Position numbers and translations under genes: made by a program. Positions 39,901-60,900 of a stretch of 64,000 nucleotides of DNA are shown in pieces. Source of the DNA: Mytilus trossulus. Taxonomy: Eukaryota. The notes beneath the pieces were generated by a model. That model was not told the origin of the DNA and made no database searches. It was given only the letters and a program-made list of their open reading frames with translations. The stretch lies in contig NC_086374.1 of the NCBI RefSeq assembly GCF_036588685.1, positions 74,214,001 through 74,278,000 of the forward strand, in the 5' to 3' direction. How positions within the stretch are numbered: the first letter of the stretch is position 1; each line of letters starts with the position of its first letter.

Positions 39901-42900
39901 GATGTACGCCAGATTGTATTTTAGATATTCACAAATATTATTATGATTATATTATTACAATTACAATGCATATTCAAAAATCATACAATTCCTATGTACA
40001 TACTATCCTAAATACACCAAAACCAAACTTCCTTTTAATGCATCCCTTCATAGACGGTCAGGGCCGGCCAGGAACAACTAGAGATTAAACGATATAATTG
40101 ACCAAAAAGCTCTAGAAACCTGTGTCAGTAGATGCCAAGTGCGCTGACCTACACCTTAAACATGTGTGTATTGGCAAATTGAATGCATTAAAAATATCAA
40201 CGTATATATCCATGTACATCACAAAATGAAAGTTGAGTGTTCACTCGTTGCACGACAGCTAGAAAGTGACCCTATGCTTTACTACCAGAAAGTATACCCA
40301 TTGGTCACTATGTGTGACCCTATTATATATTCATACGACCTGTACCCGTCAATACAATATTTCCCCCCTATACTTAAACGAAACGCGGGAAAAAACACAA
40401 TTATACCTCAATTTATTAAGAGTCTATCAAACTATATGTCAAACAAAAATTAAAATTGAGATGTGAAATGTAGAATGTGTCAAAGAAACCTGCATACATG
40501 TACAAAATGTATGTTAAATGGTGGACCTGAATTGAGGTATAATCCATGGTAATTCCTTACCTGATCAAGTTATAATTTGAAATAAATTTGGTTAGTTGCC
40601 GTAACTATCAGTAAACTCATGAATTTATGAAGAATTCTCAGCCACATGACAAATTCAACAAAGACCCCCTGTCACCATGGTCACAGTTTTGGCAAGGTTT
40701 GGCAATATTAGTTTCAATAACTTTTACAAAATCAAGATAAACACAGCAGTTTAATATGATTGATTGACTGATTCTATCCTTTAAATGGATGATTAGTGAT
40801 TCTATTACAATTGAACCACCCAAGATGATAACTAAATTTGAATACTGTAATTTAACAATATATATATAGTTTTGACATTTTTAAAGATTTGATTTGATTT
40901 CAGTTTCAGGCATCAACACCTCAGGCCTTTAACCAACAACAGCAGCTTGGAAATGTCAGATTTACTACCAATACCTCCACAGCTAGGATGCAAAACATGT
41001 TCAACCCACTACAGACATCGGTACAAGCTGGAATGCCACCCTGGGGAGCAGGGGTAGCAGTGCAGGCAGGTCAACAAAACTTTCAGCCTCAGATTATCCA
41101 GGCAGGGTTACAGAATCCTGCAATGGCCAATATGACCAACCCTCAACAGAATGCTGCTAACATGATGGGACTGCTAGCTAACCAACAGTTACTGGCACAG
41201 GCAGCTGGCTTAGTAGCTACTCCTGGTCTAGGAGTAGGAATGCAGGTATGCCATATGATTTGATCCTTTTTCTGTTATTGATGACTTCAGTGCACACACA
41301 GTGAATCACTATAGGATCACTCTTGCTAAAACTGCAGGATTGCTGATAAAGGGTTTGATCACACAAAAACTAGAGAAATCCTCTTTCTTACCAATATGGA
41401 AAACATATGTTAACTCCTGAATAAGCAAAAAAAATAAATCCTAAAAGACATCCATTTTAGACAACTTATCATCATTCACTATCTATGCAATTGCGTTACT
41501 TTGTGAAGATTGTTAAATTAACTGTATGGTTTGTGTACTGACATAAATTTTGTTTTGAATTAAGATTTAAATATTTGCAGGTGCCCTTTACTGGGCAGGG
41601 GATACTTGGTGCCGGACCAATGAGAGGACAGCTACCTCAAGTATTTCAAAATGTAGGGCAAACTGGCTTAGGTAATAGTGGACAATATTCACCGAAATCA
41701 AATATGAACCAACGTAATTCTAAATCTTCCAATCAAAATCGTGGTCGTCAATCAAATGATAGAAGTTCAGGGAATAAGGATCAAAGGTCATTTGATCGAT
41801 CAAGAAGTGATAACAGAGGAAGCCGTGATCAGAGTAAAGACAGAAAAAATAGGGAGGATAAAAAAGATCCACGAAGCGAAGACAGACGAGGTGATCAAAA
41901 ATCAAACAGAGGAGATGATCAAAGGAATTTTGACCAGAGAGACAGTAAAAATATTGACAGACGAAGAGATGGAAGTCGAGACAATAGGAAATATGACCTA
42001 CCAGATGATAGGAGGAGTAATTTCAGAGAGGATAGAAAAAATCGTAATGACAGGAACATTGATAGACTTGATGACAGACGAGATGTTAGAAAAGATGATA
42101 AAAATTTCCTCAGAAAAGATGAGAGCAAAAGGGATGATAAAAGGTAAATTATATATATACTTTCATGGGAAATCAATGAATATGAGCAAATGACACAGGC
42201 AGTCTAAACCAGATCACAGGAAGGAAGAATGATTTTATTGGTAGAACACATTCACACATGATTTTTAAATGTGTGTTTTACCAAGAAAATCAATCTTCGT
42301 GACATGGTGAATTAATTAGTGGATTAAATTTCACAAATCTGTTATTACAGGTAGTAGTCAATATAGCAAGTTGAATTTGTTTTATTTATGAAGGATTTAG
42401 TGCACATTGATCAGAAACATTGTCCCAAAGGGAAATAAACCTTAATTTGAAAAGAAAATCCAAAATATCAACCAGACATTGAATAATATAGAAAGAATTA
42501 CATTTTATTCTTTAAAAATATATTTTGACATTTTATTTACAGTGGAGATAAAAGAAAACCATTCAGAGACAGAAAAGACATAGATAGAAGAAGTGCAAAG
42601 GGAGATAATAGAAATAAAGGGGAATGTGATAGGTCAAAGGGAGATAACGATAGATCAAGAGATTTTGGTAGGAGAAGTAACCAAGGCAGTAGATCTCGTA
42701 GAGATGACGACCTATCAGACAATGCTTCCAGGTTTGATTTATAACACACAACAGAAAAAATCTTATTCACAATTCCTTTATTTTTCATTTTGAGTCCACA
42801 ATGATTTTGGAAGCAGAAACTTGCCTTGTCACAAAATTGCCATTTTTATAATACTAAACAGATGACATTCAGATTGTATGTGATTTTTTTTTCTTCTAAT

Positions 42901-45900
42901 TATCCAAAATCGTCTAAAAGCATTAAAAATTTGTTAATGACTTGTGCTTCTGAAATATATTTCAACTAGTGAAATCCTTTTCAAGAGAGTGGAATTCCTT
43001 GGTACTCTTTATATGTATACTTGTAAATAGAACAGACTTTAAATTTATGAATAACTTAATTAGATACATAAATATAGGTTAGAGATTGTAGGCCAATTTT
43101 GATTTAAAAATAAATAAATTTATCTATAAAAAAATGATATTATTATAATAGTAAAACTAGTATATTTAAGGATATAGGTAGTTTGAGTATAAGAAAACCA
43201 TTATCAATAGATGATTAAGGAGAAATAATTTGACTTTATTTTATAGTCCAGACAAGAAAAGAACCACGAGGACAAAAGACGGCACAAAAGCATCAACCTC
43301 TTCAAAGAAATCGAAGCCTGAAGACCAGGATAGTTATTCTGAGGTTGAGGATACAATAGAGGATGTGATAGAAGAAGAGATACCAGCTTGGTTGAGGTGT
43401 TCTCCATCAGATCTGTACTTTACCAGGGACAATAAAGTAGGTTCTAATCAGGCTTTTTGTTCTATCAACATGATCTAGATGAAAACCATTAGAGATTTTA
43501 TTATACCCTTTCACAGAGTGGTGGTATATTAGAATATACACAATATAACCGATAACAAACCTTGGTACATATGTATAAAAAAGATAGGTGTTAGCCCTTA
43601 ATGATTTTAATTGTTTTACACTCACAGAGTTGGTGTTATACATAAAGAACACACAATATCTAATTCTTGGTACAGACTTTGTAGGATTAGGTAGAACATT
43701 TTGGTATTATTCAGAGAAAAAGACAGAGGCAAACAAACAATCAATAAATCAGAGATAATACACATAATATGATACAGGGTTCTCTGTGGAAACTTAGTAT
43801 GGTGAGTCCCAAGTCAATATTTAAAAAATTGGGCTAGTTACCTTTAAATTGATCCTACAAGTAAAAAAGTGAAAATTCAGGACAAATTTCAGTGTTTTAG
43901 CAAGAACCTGGATGTAGACAGAATGCTGATACTACATCCAGTCCCCCACATTCCTGATGTGAAGTGTTTAGTCTCAGAAAGAGTATGCTATCCTTTTGAT
44001 AACAGAATGAAAGGATAATGGAAACTTGTTAATAGCTTTGATATTCTTTTTATTGGTTGAATGGACATAAAATATACAGTGAAACCTGACTAAACCAAAC
44101 CCTGCATAAATTGAAAACCTGTATAAACCAACATGTTCTTAAAAGCACTATCATATCAAATTGTATGCGCTGTGAACCTAATAAAACCCAACATCGGCCA
44201 AAACAAAACAAAATCTCGACTCAGGTGACCTCTAAAATAAAATGTGTGATAAGATCTGATCATTATTTGAAATGTATTGTTTTAACTTAGGTTTCAGAAT
44301 TGATGGTTATAAGCCATTATTGTTCATAAACTGTTGTTTGTTACTTATGAGTGATTTTTTGGTTACTGAGGGTCAGGCATCATGTTAGCCAAATTTAACT
44401 ACATTTTGTACTCAAATTCAAATGACTTATAATCATCTAATAAATTCCCCTTATTTGAGATTAGGTACAAATAATCATATAATTTGCCATAACTTTTTGC
44501 CTTATAAATAACAAAAGCAGAACAATGATCCATCAAATTAAAACAAGCAGGATTTTAAAAATACATTGATTTAGTTTACTGCCATTTCGAAAACCAGAAA
44601 AAAAAACCTACTTCTATGTTAATCCAGAGTCATATGAAATTTATTCTCATCTTAAACTTCAGGTTTATTGTTTTTGTCTGGAAATTGAAAGTTATACAGC
44701 TGATATAAATTTGTTTATGTAATGAATTCTGGAATGAATTTTAAGGTTTTAAAAATGTACCCTAACTTTCAAGTTCTTGGATTACTGAAATTGCTCGAAA
44801 AAGTTCTGGACTCTTATTACAGGTGGTGGGGAATTATATTCTGGTCAAACTGGCCAACTTTTCTATCAATAAACTGGCCACAATATAAAATTTACTAACC
44901 TTGAGCATGGTGTATATTAACAAAATTTACTGGCACAACTTATGGACAAGTTACTATCAGGTCTGAATAGCTTCTCATAAGAATATGTTCCAAGGCCCAA
45001 TAATTTATTTGGATCTCTGACAATCATTAACTTTCCTTGTTTTAAGTCCATGAAATGCATGATGGTGGCTTTGGTATGCTTTAAATAATGTGATTATAGA
45101 TTCCCATGTAATCACCAGTAGTATAAACTTTAATTAGGTAGATGTTTATCAGCTAGACAAGATTAGTATGTAAGTATCAGGCCTGTAAACAATCTCACTG
45201 AATTAATAGAGCATATTTCATGAAGCATTGCTGGTCTTACTTATTGTTTTAGATGATAAAAGACACAACTTTAATTTATGCCTGCCTTGGTGGACGAGAT
45301 TTACATGTTGGTCTGGATTGTGATGAATTTCATCTGGTACCAGGAGCAATTGTATCCCAGCTTACAGTAGAGGCTGCCCAGAGAGCAGTACAGATTCCAG
45401 GTCACAAGACTGTGTATTTCATAGCAGGTATACCTGATCTCCTGACAACACTTACATCACCTGGATATGAAGAAACCATCTTCGAAGACCAGAATCTCTT
45501 TGATACATTTTATGGGCAGATGCGACAGACAGAACTGGCCTTGAAACTTCATAATTGTCATGTAGTGTTTAGCACCATATCATCCATGAGTCTAAGAGAA
45601 TATAACAAGAACAACAAGAAGATGGGAAAGACTTACACGCTGAGATTTGAGAAAGATTATCCTGAAATGCAGGAGAATCTCCATCGATTACTGAAGCAGA
45701 TTAACAGTACCATTACTGCTATTAATACAAGACAGAAGTTATTAACTCCTTTTATACATTCTCATGTCAATAAGTGGTCTACAGAGAAAAACAAAACTGT
45801 ATACCGTCTTAACAAGCTTTTGGATGGACTGAATCCATGTGGCACTATAGTGGATGGGTGGCGGATCACAATTAACAAGACAATCTTAAAGAATAAAATC

Positions 45901-48900
45901 ATGATGTCCAAGCCAGATTTTAATTGGAAAACCTAGGTACTGTCCTCGAAACTCTTTGTTATTTTAATCAAGTACCTGTTAGTTTGAATGTTCGTAACTG
46001 CATTTGTTGTTATAGATGATGTTTTTGAGTTAGAAAGTATCAACAATGTGATAAAATGACAGCAAACATATCTTCAGCATATCAAACATGAAGAAGGATG
46101 TTGTTGGACTATAAATGAATGGTGGATGATAATGTGATAAATGGTGTGTGGAACTACATGAAGAGGCTGAACTTTCAGAAGCTTAGTGGGTTTATAGCTG
46201 ATTAGAAACAGTATATTTATAGATCATGAGGCACTATAAAATGTTTAAGGGATACCAGTATTCTTGCAGCAATAGTAACAATTAACCTAGCACAATGTAT
46301 ATAAGTGTATAAACCCAGTATATAGATTTCAAATGGTTTTCCATGATTTTTTTTTAAAGAAGATGAAGTAAAGCAGATACTAACTATAGAAGAGAGCTAT
46401 CATTTTGGTTAAGTGACTTGGAAATTTTAAAAGAGATTATGCAGGATGTGATCAGCTATAATGATTGAAAGATTTTCCCACCAAGGCATAAACACAGTAT
46501 TATATGAGAAGATTACATCACACGCATGTTTAAAGTCGTTCAAATCATTATCATTGTACATCTTTTTCATTAATTATTACTACTTCATCCTTATCTTGCT
46601 GTTTGTGCTAAAATGTCAAAAGTAACATAGGAGCACTTCACTTCTTGAGCTATACGAGAGGGCATATTAGAGAATAGAAACTTTTACAAACTGGCTGAAT
46701 GGTCTTTTCTTCATCTTGAGAATTGTACTTTATGATGCAATACAATAATATCTTAACAGTTAAAAAGAAGATTACCGAGAGTACAGGCAACTTCAAGTAG
46801 AACATGACATAGTTTAATTTATCAAGGCTGGCAAACTTAAAAGGATACTTACTTAAAAATTGAATTTGATTGGTTGAGCTGTATGATGTCTGTAATATCT
46901 GAATTGAAAATGGATAAAAAACTGGACAAGCAAAATCAATCATCAGAAGTCCAATGAAAGAGAGTCAAACTGACAAATCCAATAGAACATCACTTAAACA
47001 GTTGTTTCTAAATGGAGGAAAGAGATTTAACAGCTGAAAATACTTAAATACAAGATTACAGTCCTATTACATCTGAACTTTGAAAATTGACTTATATGAT
47101 AAATTCTAACATTTAAAATCAAAGACATAAAGACAAGTTTGGATGAAGAGTTGTCGCATTAGCACTCATACCACATCTTCTTATATCTATCTAACGACAT
47201 GAATATATACACCATGCCTTGAATTTAAAGATTTCTTAATAACAGAGAGAAGGAAAGTTTGATGCAACTGATCAATATTGTTACTGTTTGTCACAGTTTG
47301 CACATTGGAGAATCTTAAATATGGAATATCAATATAAAATGATTAACTCTTTCATAAATTGACAATATACCTGATTGCCAAATTACACAGCATTTCCAAA
47401 TATTACAGGATAAAGCCTAAATTAAAGAAAGTCATAAAATAAAGTTTAGTATATGAATCGTTATCTGCATTTATAATCTACACAGGTTTTGGTTGTACAT
47501 TTTCCTTCAAAGAATATATTAACCAGAGCAATGTAACATATGAACCAATTCATAATTTACTACAGAAAAGACTTAAACATATGTGGAATGAAAGAGGAAG
47601 TCAACTGGGAATGTTTTGTTTTACTCTTTGTTTGTTGTATCAAATGAGCTCCAACTTATCTGTAAATAAAGATGAGGAAAAAAATCTAGCTCGCAAAAAA
47701 TGACCACCCTTGTTGGAATATAGGGGAGACGGAAAGAAATATGAATGGATAAGAGTGATAGGAAGAATCAATAGATAATCACAGTTTATTAATCAGGTTG
47801 TGTAATGACCATATGATGTAGTATGATAGATAATGTTGAACTGAATATTGGATGAAGTTTGGTATTGAAAAAAATAGCCGAAATCATAATAGCAGATTTT
47901 TAGAAGGGCAGAAGAGCTGTATGCCTTACAAGTTGAAAGTTTAGATTTGATTGAAGTATAAAACAAAGCAACTGGAAACAAGGTAAAAAGTTTTTGGATG
48001 CAATTCATAAATGTACAAACTTAAAGAATTTATCTGTGAATAATACTGATAGAGATATTTTCAGTCATAAGAAGAAAACACAGCCGAATTTAGAAATGAA
48101 AAATATTTTAACATTTAGTGACAAGAATTTTTTGACAGAGGAAGAATCAAAGAAGATTGAATTCACCAACATTTGGAACTATCTTTTATTACAAGTGCGA
48201 TTATTTGAAAGAAAGAAAAAATGTCAACATCTAATTGAGGAGAAAATGACTACAATAAGAATGGTATCAAGATTTGACAAATTACGTGAAATATTTTCTA
48301 CAAAGACTTTGATGTATGTGGAATTAAAGACAAGTTTAAAAGTTTTACTGGTAGAATTTCTCGAAGACATACACAGAATTACCACTAGATACTAAGAATT
48401 TAGAAACAACTTAACATTCAGATGAACTTAAATTATATCTCTTCATTGAGTATTTTGAAGCGTATTTTACAGGCTATAGCTTATATACAATCAACTGCCA
48501 ACAAGATTTTTGTAGGAAGAATAGAATAAAGAAGTTGCTCACATAATGTAAGATAAAAAGAGAAAATGGATAGTTCTACAGCATCAACAGATTCATTTTT
48601 AAACTACAACTTTTATTGTGGACATGAAATATTTTCCCTCGTACTGAACAAGCAAATTTAAGGAACAATTTTATTCATTTCCGCCAATACTACAGCAGAA
48701 AAATATGACCAGGAGTGGAATCTATGCTTTAGTACTTACAATACTTCATCATGTTCATATCAAGACTTTTATATATTTACAAACTGTGTAAACTTTCTGT
48801 AAATAGTTCTTTTCTTTTTGTAAACTTTTATTCTCCTGTACATTTACCATTTAGTAACTTTTATACTTTTGAGCTCCTTTTTTTAATTTTATCCTTGTTG

Positions 48901-51900: not shown

Positions 51901-54900
51901 GTACAAAACCATGATTCCAAAAAAACAGAATGATATAGTTTGTACAATGAATTGACTAAATTATAATCTATTTTGCAACTTTGTTCTTGGATTATTTTTT
52001 GCTAAATTTGTTTATCAGTTATCTTATGAAGAACTTACAAATGGTGAAAACTTATAAATTTTAGCATGTTCTAAAGCCCTAACACCTTTTATAATGTTGT
52101 AGTGTCCAATTTTGAGACCCTGAATGATAGTTTCATTTGTTCCCAGCCAATTTTAGTTTCCCAAATCATTTAGACAACATATTCCCCCCCCCCCCAAAGT
52201 ATACACATTCCATCAATTTCCAACAAGGAGGTATAATAACAGCCATTATTTGGCCCCTAGAACTGCAAAATTATTCAAGCATTTCAAATGATGTGAACTT
52301 ACAAATAGATAAACAAGTTGCTTGCATCTTGAAACATTGATGCTGACAGGTAACTTCCAATGTAACTATGCAGTCATAAACATTTTGAACTTTGCTTTAT
52401 TTACCCAAGATGGCTATTTTTATTTCAGACTGGATGTCTCCGTGCAACAAAGAGGATGAGAGATTTAGAAGATAGATTTGAGAATGAAGTAATATTAAGA
52501 GCAGAGAGAATAAGAGATTCACAACCTAAAGTCGATCTACCATCTAGGCCACCACCAAAACTACATATACATAAACAGTGTTGCAGCCATCAAGCAGGTA
52601 TATTGTAATTCCAGACCCTAAGTTGATCAACCAATCAACAATACTCCCGTACATAAGTCCCAAAGTTGGTTTCCGTTCTCTAACTTTAGTTTGCCTCATT
52701 CAAATGTTACCAAACTTATACACAATGCATATTACCACAAAATACAGATCAAGTTCAAACTTTGGTGGTGTCACTTTAATTGTTTTAGAGTTATGTCCCT
52801 TTACAAATGGAAAAATTACTGAATCATTTTGTTTCCATTCTGGAACTCAAGTTAGCCTCAACCATGAAACTTATACACAATGTCTATTCCACAAAATACA
52901 GATGAAGTATGAATTTTGGTGGTGTCACTTAAACCGTTAAATTTAGAGTTATGCTCCTTTACAAATGAAAAAATTGCTATATTTTTTGTTTCCATTCTTT
53001 AACTTAAGTTTGCCTCAATCAAATATCATGAAACTTATACACAATACTTATGCCTCGTTCACACATACCTTTAATTTGATCTGAATTTGAATCGAATGAG
53101 AATCAAATTCGCTAATGGTGTTCACACTCTTCTTTTTTAATTCGAATTGATTCGAATTGGCTTATTCGAATTAACTAATTGGCCTAAGAAATATGTTTTT
53201 GTTAATCCTAATTAAAAGTTAACGTCGTTAGGACAGTAAAGCGAAATTGACGCGCATTCCAATTTCGAATTAGAATTGACCTTAAACGTTATTGATGTGT
53301 AAAAAAACATTAAATGTTTCAAATGCGTATTAAACTAATTCAAATTATTTAATAAGAATCAAATACAAATTACGTGTGAACTCAGCATTATTTCCACAAA
53401 ACTCAAATCAAGTATGAATTTGGGTTGCACCACTTTTACTATTCTAGTGCTATGCCCCTTAACAAAAAGAAAAATTTCTGAATTTTTAGTTTCTTTTCTC
53501 TAATAGAAGTCTGCCTCAACCAAATGTTATGAAACTCATATACAATACTTATAACCACAAAACACAGATAAAGTACAAATTTTGTAAGTGTCACTTTCAC
53601 CATTCTTCAGTTGGGCGTATGACATTTGCGCCGATTTTGAAAATTTTCATTCTTTCATTTGCGCCAATTTCATTTTTTCATTTGCGCCAATTTCATTTTT
53701 TCATTTGCGCCGATTTTATATTTGCCCTTGATTAGATTTACAGGTAGTTAATATTTGTACTTGACTGTACTGTACTATACCATTGATAAAATCTGGTTGT
53801 TCATTTATGTTTTGGTTAATTTTGATTCATATTGGTCTGGAACTTCGTTGTACATGATGCACATATTACACACTGGAACGAGCCAAGGAGTCAATTCTTT
53901 AATCAACGAGGGGCATACATATATAGGAAGGTTAGTGTCCTGAAACATAACAAAATATCTTTCAAATGTACCATAAATCGTGTAAAGCCAGAGTCACCAC
54001 GGATTCTATTGTCAAAATACTGATCGAGCATAAACATGTGGCAGATGTCCGAAAGACAGAGGTTAAAGAACTACGGGTACTGTCAAGGAAAAAGTCTGGG
54101 GGTGTATCTTGTAAGCCTTCTTACATCTCCTCATAGTGAGCAGGGGACAACAGTTATATAAATGTTATGATTGACAATTCATTATATTTGTACAAATGGC
54201 TAATGGAAGAGGTCTAAAATGATAAATGAAAAATAACATGACTTGGATTAAGAGTTCTCTTATTTGCACTCATACCACATCTTCTTATATCTATTCACCT
54301 GTTATTTACCTGTAAAAAAAATCGGCGCAAATGAAATAAATAATCGGCGCAAATGAAAGAAAAAATCAGCGCAAATGAAATGCACATCGGCGAAAATGCA
54401 AAACGCCGCTTCAGTTATGTTCCTTTTTAATTTTTTTAATTAATGAAGCCATACAAAATTTGTAAATCATAACTGGTATCCTATTTACTATGATAGAGGA
54501 CAGCTGTAGCAGCAGCTCAGACTCTAGTGATGAAGATGGTGATGATGATGAGGATGATGAATGGATAGAGGAACTAAACAAAAAGAAAAAACATCCATAC
54601 AGACTGCATGAAGAGTTATGGTACAATGATCCAGGAGAGGTAAGCAAATTAACTATACAGACTCCATTAAGAGCTATGAAAAGGCTATTATTTGAACTTG
54701 GAATTATTTTTGATTATGGAATTTGCATGATTTCTTGTGTTTTAAAATTTTTAATAAATTCCATGTTTATTTCGTATTATAATCTTTTGAGCGTTTAATA
54801 ACACTTTCCTTACAATGTATTTTGGTTAGATAGTGTTGTGTGCGGCACAGTGCATTCTATTGAAAATATACTATTTTTAGCTCACCTGGCCTAAAAGGCC

Positions 54901-57900
54901 ATGTGAGCTTTTCTCATCACTTGGCGTCCGTCGTCGTCGTCGTCGTCTGTTGTCGTTAACAATTTTTCAAACATCTTCTCCTCTGAAACTACTGAATGGA
55001 TTTGAATGAAACTTAGCATGATTGTTCCTTAGTATATCCTGCACAAAATTGCGCTTCGATTTTTGATCCGTCAAAAAACATGGCTGCCGTTACTTAAAAT
55101 AGAACATAGGGGTCAAATGCAGTTTTTGGCTTATATCTCAAAAACGAAAGCATTTAGAGCAAATCTGACATGGGGTAAAAATGTTCATTAGGTCAAGATC
55201 TATCAGCCCTGAAATTTTCAGATGAATCAAACAAACCATTGTTGGGTTGCTGCCACTTAATTGGTAATTTTAAGGAAATTTTGCTGTTTTTGGTCATTAT
55301 CTTGAAAATTATTATAGATAAAGTTAACTGTAAACAGCAAAAATGATCAGCAAAGTAAGATCTACAAATAAGTTAATATGACCAAAATTGTCAATTGACC
55401 CCTTAAGGGGTTATTGTCCTTTAATGACAATTTTTCACAATTTGTTCATCATATTTGCTAACTTTAAAAAATCTTCTCCTCTAAAACTACTCAACTAAAT
55501 TCAACCAAACTTCAACTGAATGATCAGTAGGGTGTATAAAATAAAGTTTGTGCTTTATTTTCTATTTCGTCAAAAAACATGGCCGTCATGGCTAAAAATA
55601 GATCACAGGGTAAAATGCAGTTTTTGGCTTATATCTCAAAAACTCCAGCATTTAGAGCAAATAAGACAATATGTTAAAGTATTTATTAGCTCAAGGTCTA
55701 CCTGTCCTGTAATTTTCAGACAAATTGGGTAACTGGTTTTTCAGGTATAATGCCCCTGAATTGATGATTTTAAAGAAATTTTGCAGTTTTTGATTATTAT
55801 CTTGAATACTATTATAGATACAGATCAACTGAACATTTAAATAAATTGAAAAGCCAAAATAATCATTGATGAGAGATTTAATCAAAAAAATTAAGGTGAG
55901 TGATTCAGGCTCTTGAGAGCCTCTTTTTTTGTAATAGAAAGTGTTGTGCGCAGCACAGAACATTTCAGTACAGAATAAACATGCAATTTATTAAAAAATT
56001 CAATAACAAGAAATCAAGCAAATTCCATAGTTAAAAATAATTCCAAGTTCAAATAAAAGTCTGTTTATGGTACAATGATCCAGGAGAGGTAAGACAATCA
56101 ACCATACAGACTCCATGAAGAGTTATGGTACAATGATCCAGGAGAGGTAAGCCAATCAACCATACAGACTCCATGAAGAGTTATGGTACAATGATCCAGG
56201 AGAGGTAAGACAATCAACCATACAGACTCCATGAAGAGTTATGGTACAATGATCCAGGAGAGGTAAGAAAATTAACTATACAGACTCCATGAAGAGTTAT
56301 GGTACAATGATCCAGGAGAGGCAAGCAAATTAACTATACAGACTCCATGAAGAGTTATGGTACAATGATCCAGGAGAGGTAAGCAAATTAACTATACAGA
56401 CTCCATGAAGAGTTATGGTACAATGATCCAGGAGAGGTAAGCAAATTAACTATACAGACTCCATGAAGAGTTATGGTACAATGATCCAGGAGAGGCAAGC
56501 AAATTAACTATACAGACTCCATTAAGAGTTATGGTACAATGATCCAGGAGAGGTAAGCAAATTAACTATACAGACTCCATGAAGAGTTATGGTACAATGA
56601 TCCAGGAGAGGTAAGCAAATTAACTATACAGACTCCATGAAGAGTTATGGTACAATGATCCAGGAGAGGTAAGAAAATTAACTATACAGACTCCATGAAG
56701 AGTTATGGTACAATGATCCAGGAGAGGCAAGCAAATTAACTATACAGACTCCATGAAGAGTTATGGTACAATGATCCAGGAGAGGTAAGCAAATTAACTA
56801 TACAGACTCCATGAAGAGTTATGGTACAATGATCCAGGAGAGGCAAGCAAATTAACTATACAGACTCCATGAAGAGTTATGGTACAATGATCCAGGACAG
56901 GTAAGCAAATTAACTATACAGACTCCATGAAGAGTTATGGTACAATGATCCAGGAGAGGTAAGACAATCAACCATACAGACTCCATGAAGAGTTATGGTA
57001 CAATGATCCAGGAGAGGTAAGGCAATCAACTATACAGACTCCATGAAGAGTTATGGTACAATGATCCAGGAGAGGTAAGCCAATCAACCATACAGACTCC
57101 ATGAAGAGTTATGGTACAATGATCCAGGAGAGGTAAGACAATCAACCATACAGACTCCATGAAGAGTTATGGTACAATGATCCAGGAGAGGTAAGACAAT
57201 CAACCATACAGACTCCATGAAGAGTTATGGTACAATGATCCAGGAGAGGTAAGCCAATCAACCATACAGACTCCATGAAGAGTTATGGTACAATGATCCA
57301 GGAGAGGCAAGCAAATTAACTATACAGACTCCATGAAGAGTTATGGTACAATGATCCAGGAGAGGTAAGCAAATTAACTATACAGACTCCATTAAGAGTT
57401 ATGGTACAATGATCCAGGAGAGGCAAGCAAATTAACTATACAGACTCCATTAAGAGTTATGGTACAATGATCCAGGAGAGGTAAGCAAATTAACCATACA
57501 GACTCCATGAAGAGTTATGGTACAATGATCCAGGAGATGTAAGACAATCAACCATACAGACTCCATGAAGAGTTATGGTACAATGATCCAGGAGAGGTAA
57601 GCCAATCAACCATACAGACTCCATGAAGAGTTATGGTACAATGATCCAGGAGAGGTAAGCCAATCAACCATACAGACTCCATGAAGAGTTATGGTACAAT
57701 GATTCAGGAGAGGTAAGACAATCAACCATACAGACTCCATGAAGAGTTATGGTACAATGATCCAGGAGATGTAAGACAATCAACCATACAGACTCCATGA
57801 AGAGTTATGGTACAATGATCCAGGAGAGGTAAGCCAATCAACCATACAGACTCCATGAAGAGTTATGGTACAATGATTCAGGAGAGGTAAGACAATCAAC

Positions 57901-60900
57901 CATACAGACTCCATGAAGAGTTATGGTACAATGATCCAGGAGAGGTAAGCAAATTAACTATACAGACTCCATGAAGAGTTATGGTACAATGATCCAGGAG
58001 AGGTAAGACAATCAACCATACAGACTGCATGAAGAGTTATGGTACAATGATCCAGGAGAGGTAAGACAATTAACCATACAGACTCCATGAAGAGTTATGG
58101 TACAATGATCCAGGAGAGGTAAGCAAATTAACTATACAGACTCCATGAAGAGTTATGGTACAATGATCCAGGAGAGGTAAGACAATCAACCATACAGACT
58201 CCATGAAGAGTTATGGTACAATGATCCAGGAGAGGTAAGACAATTAACCATACAGACTCCATGAAGATTTATGGTACAATGATCCAGGAGAGGTAAGCCA
58301 ATCAACCATACAGACTCCATGAAGAGTTATGGTACAATGATCCAGGAGAGGTAAGCAAATTAACTATACAGACTCCATGAAGAGTTATGGTACAATGATC
58401 CAGGAGAGGTAAGGCAATCAACCATACAGACTCCATGAAGAGTTATGGTACAATGATCCAGGAGAGGTAAGCAAATTAACCATACAGACTCCATGAAGAG
58501 TTATGGTACAATGATCCAGGAGAGGTAAGCCAATCAACCATACAGACTCCATGAAGAGTTATGGTACAATGATCCAGGAGAGGTAAGACAATTAACCATA
58601 CAGACTCCATGAAGAGTTATGGTACAATGATCCAGGAGAGGTAAGGCAATCAACTAAACAGACTCCATGAAGAGTTATGGTACAATGATCCAGGAGAGGT
58701 AAGCAAATTAACTATACAGACTGCATGAAGAGTTATGGTACAATGATCCAGGAGAGGTAAGGCAATCAACTATACAGACTCCATGAAGAGTTATGGTACA
58801 ATGATCCAGGAGAGGTAAGCAAATTAACCATACAGACTGCATGAAGAGTTATGGTACAATGATCCAGGAGAGGTAAGACAATTAACTATACAGACTCCAT
58901 GAAGAGTTATGGTACAATGATCCAGGAGAGGTAAGGCAATCAACCATACAGACTCCATGAAGAGTTATGGTACAATGATCCAGGAGAGGTAAGCAAATTA
59001 ACCATACAGACTCCATGAAGAGTTATGGTACAATGATCCAGGATAGGTAAGCCAATCAACCTTTCATACATCACAATCACTTTATACTATGAGGAAAAAC
59101 AAATCTAACATTCAATACCTTATTATTTTAGAATAAAATTCTGTTCAGTCCATATCTCTTTATCAAGCTTTCAAGGAAATAATAAAGTTTTCCACCCCAA
59201 TCTCATATGTATGGGGTGATCTGGTCCTCTCTCTATCTATAAGTTCCAGGCAGCGTTTACTTAAATAAAGATAACATAGTCAGTAATATTTTTAAAACAC
59301 CCGTCTACAGGAAGTATTATAGTATAACGTTGTTTTTCAATTTAATATTTTCAGATGAATGCTGGTCCATTGTGTAGATGTAGTATAAAGTCCAGAAAAA
59401 CAGGAATCAGACACAACAAATATCCTGGTGAAGAGGTAAGACCAAACAATGTACTGTGGATTCATTATTATTCGTTGGTTACCAATTTTCCTGTATTTCG
59501 TGGTTACAGGTGAACCAAATTAAATGTTTAACAAATAACAAAATTACTATAGGCTTGTAAGTACACTTTGGTAAAACCACGAAATCAAATATCAACAAAC
59601 TTGTGAGTTTTACTTATTCCACAATATTTGGTGCCCACGTAATTAAATGAATTCACAGTAGTTGTTTGCTACCTTTTAAGGAGCTTTTAGTTTAATCCTT
59701 CTGAGAAATAGTTGTAAAATTTTGTTTCTTTAACAATGAGAATTCTGTCAAACCTATTTCAATCAACTTAAAATTGAAAATTCCCAACTGAAATTCTCAT
59801 GTTTATAGATGACAAATGACCTTAAATAATGTTACATATCCTGGTCTACATTTAAAAAGGAACTTCATTATGACAGCAGGACTCTTGTCTTAAACTTTAA
59901 TCAGTACTCAAAGTACAAAGTATGTGCTCGAAACATCAATAATCTTGTTCAAACTTTTTATGATTGAAAGGCCTGGAGTTAAATAAAAAAAAACACTACC
60001 AACAATGTTTTCATAAGATTTTGTAATAGAAAAACCCAGTTGAATAATAATCAAATTATTATTTATTATATATAACTATATTATGCAATTAATATTTCAG
60101 GCAATATCTGCATGTGACCCAGAAAGTAACAACAGTAACAAATTGTATCATTACAAAATTAATATGTCTCCACCGACAAACTTTTTGGTAAGTACTGATA
60201 CTCAAACATGAAACTTTACATTGAAGTTGATGGTAATGTTGACCTTGAACTCTGTATACAAGTGTCTTGACCATGTGCTAAATAAATAAATGAATAAATA
60301 ATCTTTATTTCAAGAGAATGATCCCATTCGTTAAAACTAATCTTCCTGAGAGTCCTCAAAATAATAAAAACATATTTATAGGTACATACAGTATTATAAT
60401 GATATATTATACACAATATACAATTGTATTTAAATAATAATGAAAAAGCATATTAATTTGCACAATTGATGAAAAAATTGTAAAATTTTGTTTTAAAAGA
60501 TAATACATAGGACTAGTACTATTGACCAAGAAAACCATAAATATATACATGTATTGGTTTCCAAACTAAAAGTTCAAAGTATTATAACATACAACATCCA
60601 TAAATATATATTTATTTTTCAGACTAAATGTCCCAGTATTATTGACTACGACAACCATGAGTATATATTTGAAGGATACTCTTTGTTCTCCCACAGTAAA
60701 CTTGAAAATGTAAGTATAACTAGTTCTTTACATTCCAGACGTTCTCTGCACATAGATAATGAATCGTTAAATCCAAAATGTTCTCCACACATTAAAAAAG
60801 CAACATTTTAAAAATAAAAAAAGCTAATGCATCAAAAGGATAACAGAAATCAGATATTCCAAAATAAAATGGAAAGAACAACAGGCAACATCAACTATCA

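What the first reader, a model, noticed from the sequence alone, without database searches (positions are those of the whole stretch)
45240..45936. Catalytically dead SGNH-fold exon inside DROSHA intron 5, positioned to give a Drosha-N-terminus::SGNH chimeric protein
Seen: an intact 227-codon ORF in AT-rich intron DNA. Its ATG follows a strong acceptor (cttacttattgttttAG|ATG). That TAG is an in-frame stop, so the ORF cannot extend upstream. DROSHA exon 5 ends in phase 0 (AAA|GTAGGT), exactly the phase needed. Splicing 43436 to 45253 would give about 669 aa: 442 aa of Q/G/N- and RD/RS-rich Drosha N-terminus plus this domain, with no RNase III domains. The motif order PGA, VYFIAGIPD, VVFSTI, LDGLNP fits an SGNH/GDSL fold that has lost the nucleophile Ser and the DxxH His. 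Established: enzymatically inactive SGNH folds can bind RNA (Oskar OSK domain), and SGNH esterase domains occur in ORF1 of some non-LTR retrotransposons. Inference: a mobile-element SGNH domain was domesticated as an alternative last exon, producing an IDR plus pseudo-hydrolase protein (condensate or germ-granule-like) whose production competes with full-length Drosha. I know of no such described Drosha isoform.
Basis: partly seen in the sequence, partly recalled or inferred. Interest (0 to 1): 0.9.

Follow-up and report, generated by a model that had tools for sequence, protein, structure and literature searches.

The report
Retroelement-derived dead esterase exon in mussel Drosha
An intron of the mussel Drosha gene holds a conserved exon, taken long ago from a retrovirus-like element, that encodes an esterase-fold domain without its catalytic residues and can be spliced to Drosha's first exons to give a short protein with no RNase III part.

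Summary
Window 45253..45936 (+) is an intact 227-codon ORF. A polypyrimidine tract and a TAG acceptor sit directly before its ATG, and Drosha exon 5 ends in phase 0 at 43436. The window is from Mytilus trossulus.

AlphaFold2 gives a confident model (pLDDT 89.9). Its PDB matches are almost all SGNH/GDSL hydrolases (Z 13.6-16.7), and the Oskar OSK domain scores Z 14.1.

The ORF belongs to a large family of about 220-290 aa, with 1330 cluster representatives. In this genome its relatives are the last ORF of Ty3/gypsy-type LTR retroelements. Those relatives keep the block I Ser and the DxxH His. The mussel host copies alone have lost both.

The retroelement ORFs carry the same acceptor at their ATG and are annotated as spliced from a leader exon. 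The acceptor was therefore inherited: a ready-made terminal exon.

A paralogue 2.9 Mb away (RefSeq LOC134707918) repeats the architecture without Drosha's catalytic exons. dN/dS between the two copies is 0.046.

The predicted junction appears in M. edulis model CAG2220345.1 and in three intron-free ENA contigs from another mussel.

No paper describing it was found.

The parts
40901..41245 (+). Drosha coding exon, Q/G/N-rich N-terminus; ends in phase 0 (CAG|GTATGC)
   Evidence: tblastn of P0005 (99% over aa 7-122); boundaries read
41581..42143 (+). Drosha coding exon, R/D/K-rich low-complexity region
42543..42731 (+). Drosha coding exon, R/D/S-rich
43247..43436 (+). Drosha exon 5. It holds the conserved motif EEEIPxWLRC(S/T)PSD and ends in phase 0 at donor AAA|GTAGGT
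   Evidence: The motif and the phase-0 donor are kept in the paralogue (AAACTG|GTGAGT)
45232..45252 (+). Polypyrimidine tract plus 3' splice acceptor (TAG) touching the ATG
   Evidence: Conserved in the paralogue and its metagenome orthologue L039. DNA similarity between the two paralogues starts at 45240. The same acceptor stands before the ORF in the retroelement relatives
45253..45936 (+). Alternative terminal coding exon: 227-aa SGNH-fold domain without the Ser/His catalytic pair (Leu12, Asn194), stop codon included
47421..47443 (+). Nearest downstream poly(A) signal candidates (ATTAAA at 47421, AATAAA at 47438); use not tested
   Evidence: An AATAAA at 45892 lies inside the ORF
59352..59444 (+). 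Drosha central-domain exon of the full-length mRNA; it shows that the SGNH exon lies inside an intron of the full-length gene
   Evidence: human DROSHA, E 4e-9; further Drosha-like open stretches at 54466-54795, 60044-60208 and 60497-60808, recognised by eye and not searched

Best explanation
The ORF is a domesticated accessory gene of a Ty3/gypsy-type LTR retroelement.

How it arose. In the elements, this roughly 220-250 aa SGNH-fold protein is the last ORF. It is expressed from a spliced subgenomic mRNA: a short leader exon (the first 44 codons of the gag-like ORF in one family, phase 0) joins an acceptor that touches the ORF's ATG. A copy that landed in sense orientation in the phase-0 intron after Drosha exon 5 therefore acted at once as a gene trap. 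Drosha exons 1-5 splice to 45253, translation ends at 45934-45936, and the product is about 669 aa. It consists of the Q/G-rich and R/D-rich disordered Drosha N-terminus plus the SGNH-fold domain, with no central domain, RNase III domains or dsRBD.

What happened next. The flanking element sequence decayed. The domain lost its nucleophile Ser (now Leu/Ile/Thr), the neighbouring Arg and the DxxH His (now Asn). It has since been kept under strong purifying selection as a non-catalytic module. The 5' part of the gene together with this exon was later duplicated. That produced a stand-alone gene, LOC134707918, 2.9 Mb away.

Shown:
- the fold;
- the lost catalytic residues;
- the retroelement relatives and their acceptor;
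- selective constraint;
- the paralogous architecture;
- the junction in database models and in ENA contigs.

Inferred:
- use of the junction in this species;
- that making the short form diverts transcripts from full-length Drosha;
- the molecular role. My best guess is a binding module (RNA, ligand or protein) carried by a nuclear, RS/RD-type disordered region.
For: Fold:
- AF2 pLDDT 89.9, pTM 0.87.
- Foldseek found 42 PDB hits at E<=1e-3, essentially all SGNH/GDSL.
- VIA-align gave Z 16.7-13.6 for SGNH enzymes.

Lost catalytic residues:
- Among 95 full-length family sequences, block I has Ser in 89 and block V has D..H in 87.
- The exceptions are the mussel host copies (ACLGG/ACIGG/ACTGG and DGLNP) and two others, P0031 and P0093.

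Retroelement origin:
- Own-genome search found 28 matches.
- All the matches whose wider context was fetched, apart from the one paralogue, lie 3' of gag/PR-RT-RNaseH-IN, with or without an env-like ORF, in multi-kb copies 97-99% identical to each other.
- The host clade is monophyletic (100/99) on a long stem, nested among the element ORFs.

Inherited acceptor:
- Element copies have Y-tract + AG 0-2 nt before the ATG.
- The gag-like ORF has a GAG|GTAAAT donor after codon 44.
- RefSeq M. trossulus XP_063417676.1 and XP_063439768.1 (isoform X3) join exactly these two points.

Junction to Drosha:
- M. edulis CAG2220345.1, 642 aa.
- ENA contigs of 2292, 2372 and 5065 nt carry uninterrupted 721-725 aa ORFs of Drosha-type N-terminus plus domain.

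Paralogue:
- XP_063424151.1 (998 aa) maps at 100% identity to G000:C2:71.37 Mb, with the SGNH ORF as its last coding exon.
- No Drosha central or RNase III exon was found within 38 kb downstream.

Constraint:
- dN 0.13 with pS 0.73, giving dN/dS 0.046 between the two copies.
- In the paralogue's orthologues, the domain is 225/225 identical between M. trossulus and M. californianus, while the disordered part is 645/772.
- DNA similarity between the paralogues is confined to 45240-45921.
Against:
- In the protein collection, the only long model holding the Drosha-intron copy is the M. edulis CAG entry. No RefSeq Drosha isoform with this exon turned up, although RefSeq annotates the paralogue in four Mytilus species.
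- The ORF has its own ATG, so an intron-initiated transcript could also express it alone.
- The ENA contigs are unnamed, and their nature as transcripts is inferred from having no introns.
- An AATAAA lies inside the ORF at 45892.
- The order of events (Drosha insertion first, duplication second) is not resolved by the tree.
- The function is unknown.
Confidence: 0.78

Rival explanations
1. Nested independent gene. The ORF is transcribed from its own promoter inside the Drosha intron and makes a free-standing 227-aa pseudo-esterase. On this reading the fusion models are artefacts of phase-compatible gene prediction.
For: The ORF starts with its own ATG, directly after an in-frame stop. All Logan and ENA ORF calls of the close orthologues are 225-227 aa stand-alone proteins. 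No RefSeq Drosha isoform with this exon was seen.
Against: - An acceptor touching the ATG is conserved in both paralogues and in L039, although the rest of the flanks have diverged beyond recognition.
- Three intron-free ENA contigs encode the whole fusion.
- RefSeq models of the paralogue in this same genome use the equivalent junction.
- After duplication, the Drosha-like upstream exons were kept together with the ORF.
- ORF callers on genomic contigs cannot see splicing, so the 227-aa calls say little.
Confidence: 0.12
2. Neutral remnant of a retroelement insertion: an ORF that is open only because it is young, with no host function.
For: The family is multi-copy in this genome (28 matches), and many copies are young retroelements.
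Against: - The nearest element copies are only 28-35% identical.
- No element sequence flanks the ORF.
- Orthologues at 97, 83, 71 and 54% identity are intact.
- dN/dS is 0.046 with synonymous sites saturated.
- The host clade sits on a long stem and shares derived losses of Ser and His.
Confidence: 0.02
3. The exon matters mainly as a regulatory 'poison' terminal exon. Splicing into it, followed by intronic polyadenylation, lowers full-length Drosha output, and the protein is a by-product.
For: It lies upstream of all catalytic exons, so any use of the acceptor ends Drosha prematurely.
Against: A poison exon needs no conserved 227-aa domain. The domain is far more conserved than the rest of the protein: 84% (190/227) against about 60% (242/406 aligned) between genera, and 100% against 84% within Mytilus for the paralogue. 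The stand-alone paralogue keeps the domain without any Drosha catalytic part to regulate.
Confidence: 0.08

Closest known systems
CSB-PGBD3 fusion (a piggyBac transposase ORF in intron 5 of human ERCC6/CSB, used as an alternative 3' terminal exon). Cited from my own knowledge (Newman et al. 2008, PLoS Genet); not checked here.
   Same: A mobile-element ORF sits in sense orientation inside an intron, with an acceptor at its start. It captures the upstream exons of an essential host gene and yields an N-terminus::element-domain protein lacking the host's catalytic part. It has been conserved over a long time.
   Different: Here the donor is an LTR retroelement accessory ORF, not a DNA transposase. 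The domain is an esterase fold that lost its catalytic residues. The host gene is Drosha. The fusion architecture was later duplicated into a separate gene.
GDSL/SGNH ORF3 of LTR retrotransposons (bdelloid rotifer Vesta elements; Rodriguez, Kenefick and Arkhipova 2017, PMC5408684)
   Same: An extra SGNH-type ORF lies 3' of pol in Ty3/gypsy-like elements, with catalytic residues intact. The element relatives in this genome have that arrangement.
   Different: The paper describes element-borne ORFs in rotifers and reports no host domestication. The window ORF is no longer part of an element. Whether the mussel and rotifer ORFs are related to each other was not tested.
OSK domain of insect Oskar (PDB 5a4a, 5cd9)
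   Same: An SGNH-like fold without the catalytic triad, attached to other regions in a non-enzymatic protein. Structural match Z 14.1, rmsd 2.7 A over 161 residues.
   Different: The match is no closer than to ordinary SGNH enzymes (Z up to 16.7) and sequence identity is 12%. There is no LOTUS domain. RNA binding of the mussel domain is untested, so shared ancestry beyond the superfamily is not indicated.
Esterase domain of ORF1p of CR1/L2-type non-LTR retrotransposons (Schneider et al. 2013, PMC3905857)
   Same: An SGNH-fold protein encoded by a retroelement.
   Different: That one is an N-terminal, gag-position ORF of non-LTR elements and is catalytically active. The relatives of the window ORF are 3' ORFs of LTR elements.

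Membership tests
SGNH/GDSL hydrolase superfamily (fold) | Three-layer alpha/beta/alpha fold with a parallel sheet, matching solved SGNH structures | tested here: met
   AF2 pLDDT 89.9; Foldseek E 2e-6, TM about 0.6 to 4iyj, 4ppy and 3p94; VIA-align Z 13.6-16.7 over 160-188 residues
SGNH/GDSL hydrolase superfamily (active enzyme) | Block I nucleophile Ser (GDS-type motif) | tested here: not met
   The window has Leu12 (ACLGG) where 89 of 95 family sequences have Ser (xSRG, including DSRG)
SGNH/GDSL hydrolase superfamily (active enzyme) | Block II Gly (oxyanion hole) | tested here: met
   PGA with Gly31, nearly invariant in alignment A1
SGNH/GDSL hydrolase superfamily (active enzyme) | Block III GxND Asn | tested here: not met
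   GIPD. Most of the family, element copies included, has Pro or Cys here; only a few have Asn
SGNH/GDSL hydrolase superfamily (active enzyme) | Block V DxxH (catalytic Asp and His) | tested here: not met
   DGLNP: Asp191 is kept, His is replaced by Asn194. 87 of 95 family sequences have D..H
SGNH/GDSL hydrolase superfamily (sequence models) | Match to Pfam Lipase_GDSL or Lipase_GDSL_2 above the gathering score | tested here: not met
   No GDSL hit for the window ORF even at E<=10. Element relatives are sub-threshold (PF00657, E 1.5e-4 and 1.5e-3). P0031 reaches the PF13472 cut-off
Host gene::mobile-element fusion through an alternative 3' terminal exon | Element-derived ORF in sense orientation inside an intron, with an acceptor in the phase of the upstream donor | tested here: met
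   Phase-0 donor at 43436 and acceptor at 45252|45253; element ancestry
Host gene::mobile-element fusion through an alternative 3' terminal exon | Transcripts that carry the junction | tested here: inconclusive
   Seen in three intron-free ENA contigs of another mytilid and in the M. edulis model. RefSeq models exist for the paralogue in this genome. No reads could be examined for this locus
Host gene::mobile-element fusion through an alternative 3' terminal exon | Purifying selection on the captured domain | tested here: met
   dN/dS 0.046; domain 100% against disordered region 84% between Mytilus species for the paralogue
LTR-retroelement accessory SGNH ORF (still part of an element) | Lies within an element, downstream of pol or env and upstream of the 3' LTR | tested here: not met
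   No element-derived DNA flanks the window ORF. Similarity to its paralogue is confined to 45240-45921. The 28-35% identical relatives do lie in such elements
Oskar OSK domain | LOTUS + OSK architecture and RNA binding | not testable with these tools
   Only fold similarity could be measured (Z 14.1, 12% identity). No LOTUS domain is present in P0005 or P0183: Pfam finds nothing in P0183
Drosha (host gene) | Central domain and tandem RNase III domains on the same strand downstream | tested here: met
   Window 59352-59444 against the human DROSHA central domain, E 4e-9. G000:C2:74318481-74318633 against the DROSHA RNase III domain, E 3e-22

The most novel reading that the evidence does not exclude
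The dead SGNH domain is a retroelement-derived decoy. It keeps the binding surface of the elements' active esterase but not its chemistry. Carried into the nucleus or into RNP granules by Drosha's RS/RD-type N-terminus, it would interfere with the many young SGNH-bearing LTR retroelements of the mussel genome. That would make the Drosha locus and its duplicate encode a dedicated anti-retroelement factor alongside the miRNA enzyme.
Probability: 0.15. Interest if true: 0.85.

Novelty: new variant of a known kind. Interest (0 to 1): 0.64.

Why it matters
- Drosha is a single-copy core enzyme of miRNA biogenesis. A conserved isoform that swaps all catalytic parts for a retroelement-derived pseudo-enzyme would be a new output of that locus. 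It could also tune Drosha dosage, because every use of the acceptor ends the transcript early.
- The case shows a clear route of domestication. A retroelement accessory gene that already has its own splice acceptor (for its subgenomic mRNA) and a phase-0 start becomes a working terminal exon as soon as it lands in a phase-0 intron.
- Later duplication into a stand-alone gene, together with complete domain conservation across Mytilus, argues that the short protein has its own function.
- It adds a second animal example, after Oskar's OSK domain, of an SGNH fold kept without its catalytic residues inside a disordered, RNA-biology-linked protein.

Tried and rejected
No junction reads, poly(A) site or tissue pattern could be examined.

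Searches that gave little:
- Pfam on the window ORF gave only chance-level hits.
- The metagenome scan gave one short contig, L039. It is an orthologue of the paralogue and holds no upstream Drosha-like exon.
- A PDB sequence search with window 52456-52608 found nothing, so that candidate exon stays unconfirmed.
- tblastx of the window against 60 kb around the paralogue found only the ORF and shared repeats. At that threshold it also missed the exon 5 homologue that tblastn finds, so its sensitivity is limited.
- Papers: nothing describes this isoform, and no host-domesticated retroelement SGNH domain was found. Rosani et al. 2016 report only the canonical 1377-aa MgDROSHA.

Analyses that were uninformative:
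- AlphaFold2 of the whole 642-aa fusion P0005, with a 7-row alignment, failed (pLDDT 30.6). It says nothing about contacts between the exon 5 motif and the domain.
- The tree does not resolve the order of duplication and speciation inside the host clade.

Steps left out on purpose:
Exons were used by reference, and database proteins (P0005, P0024, P0183) stood in for the joined product.
- The retroelement copies were only compared.


Full report
**1. Observation**

- Window 45253..45936 (+) is an intact 227-codon ORF starting with ATG.
- It is preceded by ...cttacttattgttttag|ATG. The TAG is in frame, so the ORF cannot extend upstream.
- Upstream on the same strand lie four coding exons: 40901-41245, 41581-42143, 42543-42731 and 43247-43436. 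I placed them with tblastn of a database protein and by reading the splice sites.
- The last of these ends in phase 0 at AAA|GTAGGT. That is the phase needed to read into the ATG at 45253.
- An open frame this long is expected about 4e-4 times per window at the intron's base composition. Its GC content is 0.386 against 0.30-0.31 around it.

**2. The host gene is Drosha, and the genome is Mytilus trossulus**

- Window 59352-59444 matches the central domain of human DROSHA (E 4e-9).
- Further Drosha-like open stretches are visible at 54466-54795, 60044-60208 and 60497-60808 (recognised by eye, not searched).
- An exon 40 kb past the window end on the same strand (G000:C2:74318481-74318633) matches the DROSHA RNase III domain at E 3e-22. 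Dicer is far behind.
- The ORF therefore sits in the intron between the N-terminal exons and all catalytic exons.
- Contig C2 is 103,707,636 bases long. That is the length of the contig bearing RefSeq XP_063424151.1 of Mytilus trossulus, and this protein maps at 100% identity to C2.

**3. Fold**

- AlphaFold2 was run with a 12-row alignment of host and element copies. It gives pLDDT 89.9 and pTM 0.87.
- Foldseek against the PDB returns 42 matches at E<=1e-3. Nearly all are SGNH/GDSL enzymes: acylhydrolases, sialate O-acetylesterases, PatB/OatA and acetylxylan esterases.
- VIA-align gives Z 13.6-16.7 over 160-188 residues. The Oskar OSK domain (5a4a, 5cd9) scores Z 14.1 and 14.0, rmsd 2.7-2.8 A.
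- Pfam does not recognise the window ORF. Two element relatives give sub-threshold Lipase_GDSL hits, and one distant relative reaches the Lipase_GDSL_2 cut-off.

**4. The family and the lost catalytic residues**

- A profile search of 1.84 billion cluster representatives finds 1330 proteins at E<=1e-3, and 141 at E<=1e-30. Most are 220-290 aa.
- I aligned the best 150 plus the host copies to the profile. Of these, 95 cover both block I and block V.
  - Block I reads xSRG, with Ser in 89 of the 95. Seven of those have the classical DS.
  - Block V reads D..H in 87 of the 95.
- The exceptions are these:
  - the mussel host copies, with ACLGG, ACIGG or ACTGG in block I and DGLNP in block V;
  - P0031, a 2135-aa protein with six tandem degenerate copies of the domain;
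  - P0093.
- Gly of block II is kept. Block III is GIPD in host and element copies alike.
- As a Ser-His hydrolase the domain is therefore dead. This is a derived state of the host clade.

**5. Where the relatives live**

- A six-frame search of the genome gives 28 matches.
- One is an 80% identical paralogue on the same contig, 2.9 Mb away.
- The others are 28-35% identical. Those whose wider context I fetched fall into families whose copies are 97-99% identical over several kb.
- In the four families I extended, the ORF is the last one on the strand. It comes after a gag-like ORF and a protease-RT-RNaseH-integrase polyprotein. In two families an env-like ORF with a furin-type site also precedes it.
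- These are Ty3/gypsy-type LTR retroelements with a 3' accessory SGNH gene.
- An arrangement of this kind is published for bdelloid rotifers (PMC5408684).
- I only compared these copies.

**6. The acceptor was inherited**

- Every element copy examined has a pyrimidine tract and AG 0-2 nt before the ORF's first codon. In two families the frame has no ATG at that point, so it needs an upstream exon to be translated.
- In one family the gag-like ORF has a consensus donor, GAG|GTAAAT, after codon 44.
- RefSeq isoform X3 of two M. trossulus loci (XP_063417676.1, XP_063439768.1) joins exactly those 44 residues to the SGNH ORF.
- The accessory gene is thus annotated as expressed from a spliced subgenomic mRNA in phase 0.
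- A copy landing in sense orientation in a phase-0 intron is a ready-made terminal exon.

**7. Evidence that the junction is real**

- (a) M. edulis CAG2220345.1 (642 aa) is the Drosha N-terminus followed directly by this ORF (...FTRDNK|MIKDTT...).
- (b) Three ENA contigs of 2292, 2372 and 5065 nt encode uninterrupted proteins of 721-725 aa. Each has a Drosha-type N-terminus (49% identical to P0005, the M. edulis counterpart of the window's N-terminus, by blastp, against 30% to the paralogue's) and the domain (84-85% identical).
  - They differ from each other by a repeat-unit indel and point changes.
  - The gene has several introns here, so such contigs are best read as spliced transcripts of another mytilid. 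The contigs themselves could not be fetched.
- (c) The paralogue repeats the architecture. It has a Q-rich exon, a long R/D-rich exon, a small exon, an exon 5 homologue (47% identical, same EEEIPxWLRCxPSD motif, phase-0 donor AAACTG|GTGAGT), and then ...ttattttag|ATG and the domain.
  - RefSeq annotates it as LOC134707918 in M. trossulus, and as orthologues in M. edulis, M. galloprovincialis and M. californianus, with the domain as the last coding exon.
  - No Drosha central or RNase III exon was found within 38 kb downstream of it, nor by the Pfam RNase III search of the genome.
  - A duplicate that kept only the 'short isoform' part argues that this part works on its own.

**8. Constraint**

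- Between the window ORF and its paralogue, DNA similarity is confined to 45240-45921. That span is the ORF plus the last bases of the acceptor tract.
- Nei-Gojobori counts give pN 0.121 and pS 0.733 (saturated), so dN/dS is about 0.046.
- Paralogue orthologues of M. trossulus and M. californianus are 225/225 identical in the domain but 645/772 in the disordered part. Across genera the Drosha-type copy is 190/227 against 242/406.
- Orthologues at 97, 83, 71 and 54% identity are all open.
- In a maximum-likelihood tree the host copies form one clade (100/99) on a long stem, nested among element ORFs. Relationships inside the clade are unresolved.

**9. What is not shown**

- Use of the junction in M. 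trossulus, its share relative to full-length Drosha, the poly(A) site and the tissue pattern are therefore all untested.
- In the protein collection, the only long model with the Drosha-intron copy is the M. edulis one. No RefSeq Drosha isoform with this exon appeared. That is mild evidence that the isoform is rare in Mytilus proper, or was filtered out.
- Because the ORF has its own ATG, an intron-initiated transcript remains possible.
- Folding the whole fusion failed (pLDDT 30.6).
Exons were used by reference, and database proteins stood in for the joined product.
- No contig looked human, and no N stretch was touched.

**10. Mechanism and function**

- Shown: a retroelement accessory gene became a host exon, lost its catalytic residues, and has been kept under strong constraint in two loci.
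- Inferred: splicing of exon 5 to 45253 gives a protein of about 669 aa with Drosha's disordered N-terminus and a non-catalytic SGNH-fold module. Each such event ends a Drosha transcript before the catalytic exons.
- The role of the module is open. I consider three options:
  - a binding module, as in OSK;
  - a decoy against the SGNH-bearing retroelements that are young and numerous in this genome;
  - least likely, a mere poison exon. The domain's conservation and the stand-alone paralogue speak against this.

**11. Comparison and novelty**

- The closest analogue in kind is the human CSB-PGBD3 fusion (my own knowledge, not checked here).
- The closest relatives in sequence are LTR-element accessory SGNH ORFs.
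- The closest analogue in protein logic is Oskar's OSK domain.
- I found no paper on this isoform or on a domesticated retroelement SGNH domain. Gene models exist in databases, but only as 'uncharacterized' or misnamed proteins ('zinc finger CCCH domain-containing protein 13-like').
- I rate it a new variant of a known kind, with interest 0.64.

Noticed in passing
G000:C14:79083930-79084589 (L003, L030/L035); C8:23207034-23207648 (L007, L031/L036); C13:9112632-9113276 (L010); C5:30240999-30241628 (L017): Four families of young Ty3/gypsy-type LTR retroelements (copies 97-99% identical) end with an SGNH ORF whose catalytic Ser and DxxH are intact. Two families also carry an env-like ORF with a furin-type site (RRKSKR) followed by a hydrophobic stretch. 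RefSeq annotates a spliced leader::SGNH isoform for one family.
   Followed up: partly
protein P0031 (ENA, contig of 1.39 Mb, organism not given): A 2135-aa protein with a weak RRM-like N-terminus and six tandem degenerate copies of the same SGNH-type domain. Block I reads DxRG and block V has no D..H. It may be a second, independent host use of this family as a non-catalytic repeat.
   Followed up: no
G000:C2:71370427-71378283 and upstream (paralogue, LOC134707918; L029, L034, L040-L043): RefSeq models of the paralogue start with about 100 extra residues that hold two Cys/His-rich, zinc-finger-like motifs absent from Drosha. M. galloprovincialis XP_076091060.1 ends just after the exon 5 homologue without the SGNH exon. 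M. californianus isoform X2 is cut inside the domain. The paralogue therefore has alternative 3' ends of its own.
   Followed up: partly
protein P0004 (359 aa, Logan/ENA contigs up to 3944 nt): The most distant host-type copy (54% identical, DGLNP kept) lacks the first 36 or so residues. It runs without a stop into a long R/D-rich tail, the reverse order of domain and low-complexity region. Its contig could not be fetched.
   Followed up: no
window 45892-45897: An AATAAA hexamer lies inside the ORF, 37 nt before the stop codon. If used, it would give a non-stop transcript. The next signals are at 47421 and 47438.
   Followed up: no
window 54681-56077, and paralogue region G000:C2:71379815-71380114: A short repeat (75-90% identical at the translated level, on both strands) is shared between a Drosha intron/exon border region and the paralogue's intron. 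It looks like a dispersed element, not an exon.
   Followed up: no
L047:4945-7708 (G000:C2:74312945-74315708) and L048:4782-9944: Further downstream, one Drosha intron holds a non-LTR retrotransposon with endonuclease-like and reverse-transcriptase-like open frames (judged by eye; no domain search was run on it). It also holds a tandem array of units about 2 kb long.
   Followed up: no
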